Shown here: one piece after another, positions 1 through 3,942 of the stretch | How positions within the stretch are numbered: position 1 is the first letter of the stretch | Layout: each line of letters opens with the position of its first letter | Source of the DNA: Chlorokybus atmophyticus | Lineage: Eukaryota > Plantae > Mesostigma and Chlorokybus algae | DNA length: 64,000 nucleotides | Direction of reading: 5' to 3' | Assembly (NCBI GenBank): GCA_009103225.1 | Contig: RHPI01002438.1 | Location: 1,060,755-1,124,754 of the forward strand | Translations under genes and position numbers: made by a program | The notes under the pieces: model-generated | What the model saw: the letters and a program-made list of their open reading frames with translations, nothing else | Told to the model about the DNA's origin: nothing | Databases searched by the model: none

Positions 1-569
1 CCTCCATATGCTATTGGGCCAGTAAAAGCACAAGAGAAAGTATAAGTATAAAGAACAGGTCCACGCACATCACGTGCAACGCATGCATTTACTTAAAAGC
101 AGAGCATGTAGGCTGTGGTGGCGTTGTTGACAAAATGCGTGATGATGTGGGTGTTTTGCTGTGAGCTTGATGCATAAAGTGTTATCATGGATTCCCATAC
201 CCTGTGCTGCATAGGCAGCCTATGATGCATGGGCAGCCTGTGATAGGCCATGCTGCTTAGGCTGAGCATCACACATGAGCCACAACGGACAGTAGTCAGT
301 GACCGTGTACTAATGTAAATGCTGTCAATGCTTGCGTGGTTTAATAAAGATAGAATACACTGCCTGTTTTGGCGCAAGCCAACGCGCGCCGTTTGGTGGG
401 ATCCGCGAACGCCGACGTCGTTAACATTGTCGACCACACCGATGTGGCCACACATCCGCTGGACGGCGGCGTAGCGACCTGTGTGGCGTGAGCCATGCTG
501 GTGTACACCTGCTTGTGGAGGCGTGCGCCACTACCGTTGTTGACGAGCGCCGCCGTCCTTAGCTAAGGC

Positions 570-2831
570 ATGGTAGCAGGTGTGTCCAGCGATAAAGGAG
601 CACGACAAGGAGCAGGAGGAGAAAGACGAGCAGGAGCAGGACGAGGATCTCATCCAGGGACAGGGTGCTGCCACGCATGCAGGCGGCGTGTGCGTAACGA
701 CAGGCTGGTGCGCTGTCCGCAGGTGGGGCCGGACGTACCGCTGAAGGAGAGGCACTCGCCCTGGTGCTTCCCATGCGTCCGCCGCCTGCTCAAGCAGAGC
801 CCTCTCTTTGCCTCCGCAACAAAAGGTGAGACACTCAACTATGCAGCCTAGTGAAGCCTGCTTGCTGATTTGTAACTGAGCTGAGCATGCCGTACGCTGT
901 GCTGTAAATCAAGCTGTGAGCATCACAGCTTGATTCACTGGCCAGTGTTTGCATGCGATGCTGTTGGACCAGTTTGAACCGCAAAGACTTTCCTGGTAGT
1001 TTAGACGCACGCAGGCTTTTCTTGAGAGCAAAGCAGCATGCAGCAGTGTAGGCAAGCGCATACGACCTTACGAATGAGATGGACAACTGTGGTTGCGCAT
1101 GCACGCACACGCTTGCAATGCATGGTTGCTCGGTAACCAGTGTTGCTGCAAAGGTGGTAGCTTGTTGCTGGGTCTGAAGTGTCATCTTGCAGGTTGGCAA
1201 TGTCCTCGTTGCGGCGGTCACGAGTGTCCATGTCCAGCATGCACGCGGCGACGCAAAGACAAGCAACAGCTGGCTTCTCTCAGAGCAGCAATTGACACTC
1301 CCAAACTTGCTGAAGCAGCAGCTCCTGCTGCTGAAGTGAGAACCCCAGACATCAACTTGCCATCGAACACAACGTCACCAGGTCTGTCATCGCCCGAACC
1401 TCTTCCACCATCACCGCCACGCAAACGGTCACAGCTGCGTTCGAAAGCGTCCGACAGCAACAAGAGCAGCAGCGAGAGTGGGCGAACTGGAGTTCTTACG
1501 CGTTCACAGTCAAGAAAGGTGTGTCTGTGGAAAGCTGAATACTGGATGCATCCCGTGGAACATTTAGCGCAGAACGTATGGTCTGTGTGTTTTGTGTGCT
1601 GCAAGAACGCACTCACATTCCATTCCTCGTTCTCTTGCAGTTACAGCCGGAGAAAGGGCTTTTGCACCTACAAAATGGAGCTGGCAAGGAAGGAGCAGCA
1701 GAGTCCAACTCTGAGCCTTTCCCACCTGAACCGGTCGAACGCAGCATATATGAAGAGGCAAAGCCTCCTACCCGCCCGCCCCGCTCTTCATTGGACTCAT
1801 CTGCATGGGAGCAGTGGCGTTTGAGCCCAACACCCGCCAAAGTGCGCACGCTGCCCAATGCAAGAATACGAGCCGTTAGTGATACAGACACAAGTACAGT
1901 GCAGCCAACAGAGACAACATCTCCTTTCAAGGAGGTCCCCGCAAACGAGCCTTCTGCCTCGATGCCAAGCCCATCAGATGACATCAACATAAGCGATGCA
2001 TCCATTCCGTCTTCAACGCAAAACATATCAAATGTTTCTGCTGCACAAAGCCCGAGCAAGCGGGTCAAGTCAATAAAGGACAAGCCAAGGCCATCAACAA
2101 AACGGAAAAGGGTGGGCCGAGTTTACTTTTGACTCCTGTACCAGTGCAACAATGGACTGATTGTGCTGCAGTTTCAGGGTGTTGTTGATGGTCCTGTTGG
2201 CCCGCGCGTGTTGTGGACGCCTCCCAAGTCGCCTTTTGGCTTGATACAGGAGCAGCTGTATCAGGACCCTTGGAAGGTGTTGGTGGCCTGCATGCTTCTG
2301 AATAAAACCTCCGGCAAAGTGGTATGTGGCGTTCGTTGTTTTGTGGATACACTATGAAGTGTGGCTTTGCTGTCTCAAGTTACGCAGCAATCTCAGTGTG
2401 TCTTTTTCATGTGCTTTGTATTGTGCAGGTTCATCAGGTCATATGGAACCTGTTCAAGATCGCACCAACACCCGAAGCGACGGTAAAGCTGCCGGTTGAG
2501 ACCATATCAGAGGTCATTCGTCCGCTCGGGTTGTACAACATCCGAGCCAAGTCCATTAAGCGCATGTCTGAAGATTACATAAAGCGGGACTGGACCTCTG
2601 TGCTGCAGCTGCATGGTGTTGGAAAGTAAGTTTTGCAGCATTTGCGCCCGTTTTGCTTTGGTTGTTGTCCAAGTACACCGTTACAGTTCTGTGGCGTTCA
2701 GGTATGCTTCGGATGCTTATAATATCTTCTGTGAGGGTCGATGGCGTGAAGTGGACCCCGATGACCACATGCTGAACAAGTACCACGAATGGTTGAAGCA
2801 GACGGACGGCTATGGTTGCGGGTATCAGTAG
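570..2831 (+). CDS. MBD4: MBD4-like HhH-GPD mismatch DNA glycosylase with an N-terminal zf-4CXXC_R1-like zinc finger (6 exons)
   Basis: Phase-consistent GT-AG exons: 570-825, 1193-1518, 1641-2111, 2172-2321, 2429-2625, 2702-2831. The C-terminus has MBD4 motifs [56 protein letters not shown] and [10 protein letters not shown]. The N-terminus reads CHACRRR..C..WCFPC..WQCPRC..CPCPAC across intron 1. Confidence 0.9.
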
Positions 2832-3942
2832 GCGTCATAATGACTAGTGCGATTGTTGAGTTTGGATGATTTCTTGTACAGATGGACTGCAGGTGCGCTA
2901 GCTTAATGCTTCCCACGGCAGCCGCTTGCCTTATAGATAATACCTGCATTACGTGATAAGAGTTACTTTTTATTGTTTAGTTGGAGAGTAAGCAGTTGCG
3001 CCCAACTGCAAGGTATGGTTGCCATTGTCGATACAGTGTTGTGATGCTATCACCTGAACGCAGTGTGTTCTTCTTATGTGACATGTGACCGAGACTATCA
3101 TGCACTCACTGCGCCCAACGGTAGTGCATCGTCTTCTGCTGCTGCTGCTGTGTCATCATCGTGATTAATCAGTCAATGCCGCACCTCCTGACACAATTGG
3201 CGCCTACTTGGCAGTAGGCCCCTAGCCAGTCCTCTGGTGCATACGGTTGTACATATTAATGTTTGGTTACTGGCTGCTTTGGGCGTGCAAATGCATCCGT
3301 ATAATTGCGCATATGTGGCTCTGCTTATGGCACAAACTTGGTGTGGTCCAGTCTATGTTATGAAAGAAGCCTCCTACTTAAGAGGTGATAGTTCAATTAC
3401 TACATCCACTGATGATGGATCGTGTACACTAAAGTCATAGTTGCTTGTGATGTGTATAATAAATAGAGTTCAAGGATTGTGGCATGCATGAGAGTGTGAC
3501 ACACACATGCATGAGCAGTCGACTCACCACATTATGAAGCACTCTTATTAACCGCCGGGCTGCCAACCTAGCTGCTACCTACCTTCTCTGTGCTCGAACA
3601 GCTGATAGTTCGTGAGATGTGTGATTCAGTTCGTTGCATACAAGTGTTGTTTCCTATATGGAACTTCGTATATGGAACTTCTTGTAGGGTCTGGGATGCG
3701 CACAGTTTGTTAAACTACACGCAACTGTGAGTGTGCAATGTAATGTTACTGCAGCGCCTAATGCAACACTAGAGGGAAAGTGCAGTCAGGACGGTGTTTT
3801 GTATGCACAGATTGCATTGTACAGCTTTTCAGTGACCATCAAAGACCAAAGTTGTGCACAACGGCGATAGTAGAGGCAGCAGACTCAAATAAAAGTGGAA
3901 AACGGTTTCTTGCTGTAAGGCATCCAATATTTTACTCGCGAG

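What the first reader, a model, noticed from the sequence alone, without database searches (positions are those of the whole stretch)
570..2831. MBD4-type glycosylase fused to a CDCA7-like zf-4CXXC_R1 finger in place of a methyl-binding domain
Seen: the spliced N-terminus gives CHACRRR-x8-C...WCFPC...WQCPRC-x4-CPCPAC, joined in phase across intron 1, upstream of a low-complexity linker and a complete MBD4 catalytic domain. Established: animal MBD4 uses an MBD, Arabidopsis MBD4L has none, and the CDCA7 zf-4CXXC_R1 domain (CHQCRQK..FCGPC..WHCPPC..CNCSFC) senses hemimethylated CpG. Inference: this lineage may have re-acquired a methylation or chromatin reader to aim T:G/U:G repair at methylated DNA. 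The Arg of CHxCR is kept, but the CDCA7 NRYG segment is not, so specificity may differ. JMJ25-type proteins carry a related finger.
Basis: partly seen in the sequence, partly recalled or inferred. Interest (0 to 1): 0.78.

Follow-up and report, generated by a model that had tools for sequence, protein, structure and literature searches.

The report
MBD4 repair enzyme with CDCA7-type finger
A streptophyte alga (Chlorokybus) makes one spliced mRNA for a DNA-repair enzyme that removes T or U mispaired with G, and in place of the animal methyl-DNA-binding domain it carries a divergent zinc finger of the family that senses half-methylated DNA in CDCA7; the same fusion exists in at least three other streptophyte algae and I found no paper describing it.

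Summary
Window 570-2831 (+) is a six-exon gene for a 509-aa protein. One 1868-nt public transcript contig covers 404-3003 with all five introns removed as modelled, so finger and glycosylase are on one mRNA. The protein is already in EukProt as a Chlorokybus atmophyticus model, annotated there with HhH-GPD only.

The C-terminus is a canonical MBD4-type glycosylase (E 1e-47 to human MBD4, ungapped, catalytic Asp kept).

The joined finger matches Pfam zf-4CXXC_R1 only at the threshold: 23.9 bits as an isolated domain and 21.6 in the whole protein, against a cut-off of 22.7. Its clear homologues in Spirogloea, Closterium and one further public transcript contig score 32-35 bits. They sit on the same glycosylase. 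They keep the CDCA7 CRQK motif and Gly294.

So the fusion is not private to this lineage. It is probably an old streptophyte-algal architecture that land plants lost.

The Chlorokybus finger keeps only Arg274 of the CDCA7 DNA-reading residues. All four fingers lack the fourth signature Cys; an invariant His may replace it. Methyl-CpG reading is therefore plausible but unproven. Structure prediction failed (pLDDT 50-60). I rate it a new variant of known kinds, of moderate to high interest.

The parts
404..569 (+). 5' UTR (minimum extent). It holds two short uORFs: ATG442 (10 codons) and ATG495 (23 codons, ending in TAA at 564-566).
   Evidence: Transcript contigs start at 404 and 407. uORFs read.
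570..825 (+). Exon 1: start codon, Gly/Arg-rich N-terminus, and the first two thirds of the finger (C34...C69, coding from 669).
826..1192 (+). Intron 1 (367 nt, GT..AG, phase 1). It splits the finger.
   Evidence: Joint 'skips 367' in contigs of two runs.
1193..1518 (+). Exon 2: last third of the finger (W87[15 protein letters not shown]102, to 1242), then a basic patch and the start of the linker.
1641..2111 (+). Exon 3: Ser/Pro-rich low-complexity linker ending in a basic, NLS-like stretch (residues 334-351).
   Evidence: no Pfam family; no blocks conserved with the orthologues.
2172..2321 (+). Exon 4 (alternative acceptor at 2178): start of the MBD4-type glycosylase domain ([13 protein letters not shown]...LLNKTSGK). 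Q377 and K396 correspond to human Q449 and R468.
2429..2625 (+). Exon 5: core of the HhH-GPD domain, including L436 (human L508) and the HhH motif LHGVGK.
2702..2831 (+). Exon 6: end of the glycosylase domain with Y468 and catalytic D488 (human D560, codon 2763-2765). Stop TAG at 2829-2831.
2832..3029 (+). 3' UTR (minimum extent).
   Evidence: Contigs end at 3003 and 3029.

Best explanation
This is the MBD4-like (MBD4L-type) base-excision-repair gene of Chlorokybus.

Shown here:
- One mRNA encodes a 509-aa protein.
- The C-terminal 150 residues are a canonical MBD4-type HhH-GPD glycosylase with the catalytic Asp (D488) and the base-flipping and wedge residues in place.
- The N-terminus is a Cys/His-rich finger homologous to the zf-4CXXC_R1 fingers that head the same enzyme in Spirogloea, Closterium and a further alga.

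Inferred from family knowledge:
- The enzyme removes T, U and 5-substituted U opposite G, preferentially at CpG. These are the deamination products of 5-methylcytosine and cytosine.
- The basic stretch before the catalytic domain takes the protein to the nucleus.

Inferred from the finger:
- It binds three zinc ions. H62 probably stands in for the missing fourth cysteine.
- It acts as the DNA or chromatin targeting module, lying in the major groove with R38 (human CDCA7 R274) against a CpG guanine and a 5-methyl group. It would then concentrate the glycosylase on methylated CpG DNA, as the MBD does in animal MBD4.
- In the zygnematophyte proteins R274, Q275 and G294 are kept, and R304 is R or K, so hemimethyl selectivity is plausible there.
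- In Chlorokybus Q275 is R, G294 is S and R304 is L, so its selectivity is likely relaxed or different.
- The architecture is most simply ancestral to streptophyte MBD4L and lost towards land plants.

My odds: single gene and MBD4-type enzyme 0.95. Finger a true zf-4CXXC_R1 homologue 0.85. Old shared architecture rather than separate gains 0.75. Methylation-dependent DNA reading by the Chlorokybus finger about 0.4. The confidence figure given for this explanation is for the whole package, targeting role of the finger included.
For: - Gene model and single spliced transcript. The identical 509-aa database protein is named jgi/Chlat1/834.
- Glycosylase: HhH-GPD 4e-9. Human MBD4 catalytic domain 1.4e-47, ungapped. 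Q377, L436, Y468 and D488 are conserved, and K396 is the usual plant and algal state of R468.
- Finger, family scans: zf-4CXXC_R1 is the best Pfam family for the joined finger, at 23.9 bits alone and 21.6 in the whole protein, cut-off 22.7. The orthologues score 32-35 bits.
- Finger, homology to the orthologues: z = 14-16 against shuffles; BLASTP 1e-9.
- Finger, solved structures: the best sequence match for the Spirogloea finger and for the four-finger profile is CDCA7, aligned end to end with the Cys in register.
- Finger, language-model neighbours: zf-4CXXC_R1 clusters at 0.86 and 0.84, a lead only.
- Roles of the CDCA7 residues R274, Q275, R304, S330 and G294: PMC11343034.
- MBD4 and MBD4L substrate range, and lack of an MBD in plant MBD4L: PMC6728418.
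- Distribution: four finger-bearing proteins. No finger in 24 other MBD4-like hits. No finger exon within 10 kb upstream of the Closterium finger-less paralogue or the Sphagnum gene. The tree follows the species tree.
- Context: window-wide CpG o/e is 0.74 with TpG/CpA at 1.56. This fits ongoing 5mC deamination but does not prove it.
Against: - The Chlorokybus finger is only at the Pfam threshold. Split at the intron, its first part scores better against an IRF2BP-type RING (20.9 bits).
- One of the 11 signature cysteines is absent in all four fingers.
- Only one of the three ICF residues is kept in Chlorokybus, and neither Q275 nor S330 is.
- The last fifth or so of the Pfam profile, C-terminal to the last cysteine, is not matched: the match covers profile positions 7-78 of 99.
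- Two AlphaFold runs gave pLDDT 50.6 and 59.5. The only Foldseek lead to CDCA7 has E 0.14 and TM 0.28, so the fold is not confirmed.
- The intron inside the finger lies five codons away from the one in Closterium, so intron position gives no support for common origin.
- Class III zf-4CXXC_R1 fingers in JmjC proteins also lack the ICF residues, and their DNA-methyl reading is not established (PMC10538959).
- No methylome of this alga was examined.
Confidence: 0.55

Rival explanations
1. The finger is a zf-4CXXC_R1 relative that no longer reads DNA methylation, or never did. It would serve as a general DNA or nucleosome anchor, or as a protein-interaction module, like the class III fingers of plant JmjC demethylases. 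The fusion would then say nothing about methylation targeting.
For: Chlorokybus keeps only R274 of the residues that contact DNA in CDCA7, the fourth Cys is missing, and the last fifth or so of the Pfam profile is unmatched. Class II and III fingers with changed ICF residues are common in plants (PMC10538959).
Against: The zygnematophyte orthologues keep CRQK, G294 and a basic residue at R304. That is hard to explain without selection for the CDCA7-type DNA contact. The partner enzyme acts on CpG deamination products.
Confidence: 0.3
2. The finger is a RING-type (IRF2BP-like C3HC4) module for ubiquitin ligation or protein binding, not a zf-4CXXC_R1.
For: The exon-1 part alone matches zf-C3HC4_IRF-2BP1_2 at 20.9 bits, and IRF2BP2 RING chains at E 0.003.
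Against: The score is below the family cut-off of 26 bits and falls to 18 and 14 bits once the finger is joined. The orthologues show no such hit at E 0.01. The tail W-x-CPxC-x3-4-CxCxxC is the zf-4CXXC_R1 signature and has no RING counterpart.
Confidence: 0.05
3. The fusion arose independently in Chlorokybus and in Zygnematophyceae.
For: The intron inside the finger is not at the same codon in Chlorokybus and Closterium. Fingers are only 36-39% identical between the two groups. No finger-bearing copy was recovered from other streptophyte classes.
Against: All four share the same order of domains, the same loss of the fourth Cys and the same invariant His-x-P-W-C. The glycosylase tree does not separate finger-bearing from finger-less copies and is compatible with one origin.
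Confidence: 0.12
4. Two neighbouring genes, a small finger protein and a glycosylase, were wrongly merged.
For: None beyond the long low-complexity linker. In two Closterium assemblies annotators called short fragments that hold the last third of the finger and part of the linker.
Against: One contig with five exact GT..AG joints and one uninterrupted ORF in two independent studies. An in-frame stop lies just upstream of ATG570. In another species an intron-free 2816-nt contig carries finger and glycosylase in one 784-aa ORF.
Confidence: 0.02

Closest known systems
Animal MBD4 (MED1): MBD plus HhH-GPD mismatch glycosylase
   Same: The catalytic domain aligns without gaps at E 1e-47, with Q449, L508, Y540 and D560 conserved. 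The overall logic is the same: N-terminal DNA reader, long disordered linker, C-terminal glycosylase.
   Different: There is no MBD (PF01429 not found); a Cys-rich finger stands in its place. R468 is Lys, as in other plant and algal homologues, and K562 is Met.
Arabidopsis MBD4L and other land-plant MBD4-like glycosylases
   Same: Same enzyme lineage: the catalytic domain is 52-63% identical to the land-plant hits, and the Chlorokybus protein branches at the base of the green-lineage MBD4-like sequences. All lack an MBD (PMC6728418).
   Different: The land-plant proteins examined have no finger. This protein and its zygnematophyte counterparts do.
CDCA7 / CDCA7L hemimethylation-sensing zinc finger (class I zf-4CXXC_R1)
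   Same: Same Pfam family. The spacing CHxCR...C...CxxC...WxCPxC...CxCxxC is shared. R274 is kept in all four fingers. The zygnematophyte versions also keep Q275 and G294 and have R or K at R304.
   Different: The fourth signature Cys is missing. In Chlorokybus Q275 is R, G294 is S, R304 is L and S330 is P. The last fifth or so of the Pfam profile is unmatched. The finger is attached to a glycosylase, not to a CDCA7-type protein. It is not a CDCA7 orthologue by the criteria of PMC10538959.
Class II and III zf-4CXXC_R1 proteins (DDR1-3 with DDT/WHIM1; IBM1/JMJ24/JMJ25 with JmjC)
   Same: These are precedents for the finger being reused on other chromatin enzymes, with ICF residues changed.
   Different: The partner domain here is a DNA glycosylase. 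That combination was not found in the 2023 survey's text or held supplements, nor in any paper holding both terms.

Membership tests
MBD4-type HhH-GPD DNA glycosylase | HhH-GPD domain that matches MBD4 catalytic domains better than Nth/EndoIII | tested here: met
   Pfam HhH-GPD at 37.2 bits, cut-off 26.2. MBD4 chains at 1.4e-47 against EndoIII at 3e-8.
MBD4-type HhH-GPD DNA glycosylase | Catalytic Asp (human D560) and the flipping and wedge residues Q449, L508 and Y540 | tested here: met
   D488, Q377, L436 and Y468 align without gaps. R468 is K396, which is the common state in plant, algal and fish homologues.
MBD4-type HhH-GPD DNA glycosylase | Excision of T or U opposite G with CpG preference | not testable with these tools
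   Needs an enzyme assay.
Animal MBD4 architecture | N-terminal methyl-CpG-binding domain (PF01429) | tested here: not met
   No MBD hit at E up to 10. The MBD is detected in control hits P0029 and P0030.
Pfam zf-4CXXC_R1 (PF10497) | Score at or above the gathering threshold of 22.7 bits | tested here: inconclusive
   Chlorokybus scores 23.9 bits for the isolated finger and 21.6 bits in the whole protein. The orthologues P0011, P0012 and P0034 score 34.4, 34.6 and 32.1 bits.
Pfam zf-4CXXC_R1 (PF10497) | Eleven signature cysteines | tested here: not met
   Ten of eleven are present. The fourth is absent in all four fingers, and an invariant His (H62) lies one residue before the G294 position.
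Pfam zf-4CXXC_R1 (PF10497) | CDCA7-like three-zinc fold | tested here: inconclusive
   AlphaFold pLDDT 50.6 and 59.5. The top Foldseek hit is CDCA7 8yv8_K, but at E 0.14 and TM 0.28.
CDCA7 orthologue (class I finger, hemimethylation sensor) | All three ICF residues (R274, G294, R304) plus Q275 | tested here: not met
   Chlorokybus has R38 kept, then R39, S63 and L73. Spirogloea keeps all four. The other two zygnematophyte proteins have K at R304.
CDCA7 orthologue (class I finger, hemimethylation sensor) | Selective binding of hemimethylated CpG | not testable with these tools
   Needs binding assays.
IRF2BP-type C3HC4 RING (PF25454) | Score at or above the cut-off of 26 bits | tested here: not met
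   20.9 bits (exon 1 alone), 18.0 (joined finger) and 14.3 (whole protein).

The most novel reading that the evidence does not exclude
The CDCA7-type hemimethylation-sensing finger is a portable reader. Early streptophytes attached it to the MBD4 glycosylase, so repair of deaminated 5-methylcytosine was aimed at CpG sites carrying a methyl group on one strand, possibly even inside nucleosomes, where CDCA7's finger can read. This would be a solution parallel to the animal MBD, and land plants later discarded it.
Probability: 0.3. Interest if true: 0.75.

Novelty: new variant of a known kind. Interest (0 to 1): 0.6.

Why it matters
MBD4 is the textbook case of a repair enzyme tied to a methyl-CpG reader, and plant MBD4L is described as having lost that link. 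[quoted passage not shown] In 2024 that family was shown to sense hemimethylated CpG, even on nucleosomes.

If the finger reads methylation, there are three consequences:
- Coupling of T:G repair to DNA methylation would have evolved at least twice, with unrelated readers.
- It would be the first use of the CDCA7 finger outside remodeller or demethylase contexts.
- It would provide small natural variants (the CRQK and CRRR versions) for dissecting how the finger discriminates methylation states.

If the finger does not read methylation, this is still an undescribed architecture that dates a domain loss on the way to land plants.

Tried and rejected
- Pfam on the finger split at the intron gave no zf-4CXXC_R1 hit, only a sub-threshold RING hit. 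This was an artefact of splitting and was resolved once the database copy of the protein supplied a reference for the joined finger.
- The exhaustive HMMER search with the first 55 finger residues found only the protein itself plus four spurious repeat proteins. It missed the true orthologues, so it says little about absence.
- AlphaFold on four-sequence alignments of the Chlorokybus and Spirogloea fingers gave pLDDT 50.6 and 59.5. Foldseek against the PDB gave no significant match, so I draw no structural conclusion.
- Intron-position conservation inside the finger was tested and not found.
- I searched for a hidden finger exon within 10 kb upstream of the finger-less Closterium and Sphagnum genes. 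None was found.
- No conserved motif was found in the linker across the four proteins.
- Profile word search for short finger fragments returned only two Closterium fragments that hold the last third of the finger and part of the linker.
- The organism behind run ERR2041121 could not be named with these tools.

Full report
**Observation.**
Reading 1-3600 and joining candidate splice sites gives six exons on the + strand: 570-825, 1193-1518, 1641-2111, 2172-2321, 2429-2625 and 2702-2831. All introns are GT..AG, and the result is one ORF of 509 residues. An in-frame TAA at 564-566 makes ATG570 the first possible start.

Public run X2 contains one 1868-nt contig that lies on 404-3003 with exactly these five joints and no mismatches. 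Run X1, from a different study, shows the same joints and also a second acceptor 6 nt downstream, at 2178. Contigs cannot measure expression, but a fully spliced single ORF in two studies rules out two separate genes.

An exhaustive search returned a 509-aa protein identical to my model. A source names it jgi/Chlat1/834/Chrsp104S01175, that is Chlorokybus atmophyticus, a deep-branching streptophyte alga.

**The glycosylase.**
- Residues about 360-505 match Pfam HhH-GPD.
- They align without a gap to the human MBD4 catalytic domain at E 1.4e-47. EndoIII-type enzymes are far weaker.
- With the constant offset of 72 residues, human Q449, L508, Y540 and the catalytic D560 correspond to Q377, L436, Y468 and D488.
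- R468 is Lys here, as in nearly all plant, algal and fish homologues in my alignment.
- No MBD is present.

By family knowledge the enzyme should excise T, U and 5-substituted U opposite G with a CpG preference (PMC6728418). That is inference, not a test.

**The finger.**
Split at intron 1, the pieces do not hit zf-4CXXC_R1. The first piece weakly resembles the IRF2BP RING.

Joined, using the database copy as a reference, the best Pfam family is zf-4CXXC_R1:
- 23.9 bits for residues 28-110 alone and 21.6 bits within the whole protein, against a gathering score of 22.7.
- The RING score falls at the same time.

Chlorokybus alone is therefore borderline, which explains why its database entry carries only HhH-GPD.

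**Relatives with the same fusion.**
The decisive evidence comes from relatives. A search with the glycosylase region found two proteins that also carry PF10497: Spirogloea muscicola SM000076S21745 (721 aa) and a 784-aa ORF on a Logan contig of run ERR2041121. A search with the Spirogloea finger added Closterium sp. NIES-53 (744 aa).

- All three score 32-35 bits on zf-4CXXC_R1.
- All three end in an MBD4-type domain. In Closterium NIES-53 this domain is much more divergent, at 35% identity.
- The Chlorokybus finger aligns to each of them with z = 14-16 against composition-preserving shuffles.
- All four share invariant C-H-x-C-R, H-x-P-W-C-x-x-C and W-x-C-P-R-C...C-P-C-x-x-C.
- The best solved-structure sequence matches of the Spirogloea finger and of the four-finger profile are CDCA7 chains, aligned over the whole domain, though only at E 0.03-0.3.
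- Language-model neighbours are zf-4CXXC_R1 clusters at 0.86 and 0.84, which is a lead only.

**Finger residues against CDCA7.**
I used the definitions of PMC10538959 and the structural roles in PMC11343034.

| Human CDCA7 feature | Role | Chlorokybus | Zygnematophyte proteins |
|---|---|---|---|
| Fourth signature Cys | One of the 11 signature Cys | Absent | Absent in all three |
| R274 | Contacts 5mC and the guanine | R38, kept | Kept in all three |
| Q275 | Clashes with a second methyl group | R39 | Kept |
| G294 | Supports a zinc site | S63 | Kept |
| R304 | DNA backbone contact | L73 | R or K |
| S330 | DNA backbone contact | P100 | Not kept |

- All four fingers have ten of the eleven signature cysteines. 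An invariant His (H62) lies one residue before the G294 position, and I propose it as the replacement zinc ligand. That is inference.
- The last fifth or so of the Pfam profile, C-terminal to the last cysteine, is not matched: the match covers positions 7-78 of 99.
- The protein is therefore not a CDCA7 orthologue.
- The zygnematophyte fingers are close to class I. The Chlorokybus finger is a divergent member.

**Structure.**
Two AlphaFold runs on four-sequence alignments gave mean pLDDT 50.6 and 59.5. Foldseek ranked a CDCA7 nucleosome-complex chain first, but at E 0.14 and TM 0.28. I treat the fold as untested.

**Distribution and history.**
- A profile of the four fingers finds no finger in the other 24 MBD4-like proteins recovered: mosses, ferns, a flowering plant, chlorophytes and a fish.
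- No finger-like exon lies within 10 kb upstream of the finger-less Closterium paralogue or the Sphagnum gene.
- In a maximum-likelihood tree of the catalytic domain, Chlorokybus branches at the base of the green-lineage sequences. The Spirogloea and ERR2041121 proteins group with Mesotaenium and the finger-less Closterium copy, and land plants follow. Finger-bearing proteins do not form a clade of their own, and starred branches allow a single origin.
- The simplest reading is a fusion present in the streptophyte ancestor, or earlier, and lost towards land plants. In Closterium there would have been a duplication, after which one copy lost the finger and the other let its glycosylase drift.
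- Separate gains are not excluded, because the intron inside the finger is five codons apart in Chlorokybus and Closterium.
- Sampling is thin. My searches were capped, and the single-sequence exhaustive search was too insensitive to see even the known orthologues.

**Mechanism.**
Shown: one protein joins the finger, a disordered linker with a basic stretch, and an intact MBD4-type active site.

Inferred: the protein is nuclear, and the glycosylase removes deamination products at CpG. The finger tethers it to DNA, most likely through the conserved Arg of CHxCR in the major groove of CpG. It would thus play the part of the animal MBD.

The product of 5mC deamination at a symmetric site still carries 5mC on the other strand, so a reader of one-sided methylation is an apt partner.

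For Chlorokybus specifically, the changed Q275, G294 and R304 positions make relaxed or altered selectivity likely. I put methylation-dependent reading at about 0.4.

Circumstantial context:
- The window shows CpG o/e 0.74 with TpG/CpA 1.56.

**Novelty.**
- No paper in the searchable library holds zf-4CXXC_R1 together with glycosylase, or MBD4 with CDCA7 and domain architecture.
- The 2023 survey of zf-4CXXC_R1 proteins mentions neither glycosylases nor Chlorokybus in its text or held supplements.
- Papers naming MBD4L with algae do not describe it.
- The proteins themselves sit unnamed in public sets.

I class it as a new variant of known kinds: a new domain architecture built from two well-studied modules.

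**Limits.**
There is no biochemical, structural or methylome evidence. The organism behind ERR2041121 is unknown. The spliced protein was handled only through its database copy.

Noticed in passing
window 442-566: The 5' UTR of the transcript holds two short uORFs: ATG442 (10 codons) and ATG495 (23 codons). The second is in frame with the main ORF and ends in TAA three bases before ATG570. This may mean translational control by reinitiation.
   Followed up: no
window 2172 / 2178: Two acceptors 6 nt apart are both used in run X1, giving isoforms with or without Phe-Gln just before the glycosylase domain.
   Followed up: partly
window 1-64000: CpG is depleted throughout (o/e 0.74; 0.59-0.91 in 4-kb bins), while GpC is 1.40 and TpG/CpA 1.56. 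This is the pattern expected where methylated CpG decays by deamination, but it is not proof of methylation.
   Followed up: partly
P0034 (Closterium sp. NIES-53; locus L004 2001-4870) against P0006 (Closterium sp. Naga37s-1; L002): Closterium has two MBD4-like genes. A finger-less one has a conserved catalytic domain. A finger-bearing one has a glycosylase on a very long branch, with the LLNKTSGK motif changed to LLEGHPSH. This may be a reader that is losing or changing its enzyme.
   Followed up: partly
P0020 and P0022 (Micractinium), residues about 60-80: Chlorophyte MBD4-like proteins carry a different small N-terminal knuckle, GC-x-KCRYSRGGC-x-RCR (CxxC-x7-CxxC), with no Pfam match. MBD4-type enzymes in green algae may have picked up several kinds of zinc module.
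   Followed up: partly
P0029 (ENA, 282 aa): A short protein with a true MBD (50 bits) plus an MBD4 glycosylase groups with the chlorophyte sequences in the tree. The MBD-glycosylase architecture therefore may not be confined to animals.
   Followed up: no
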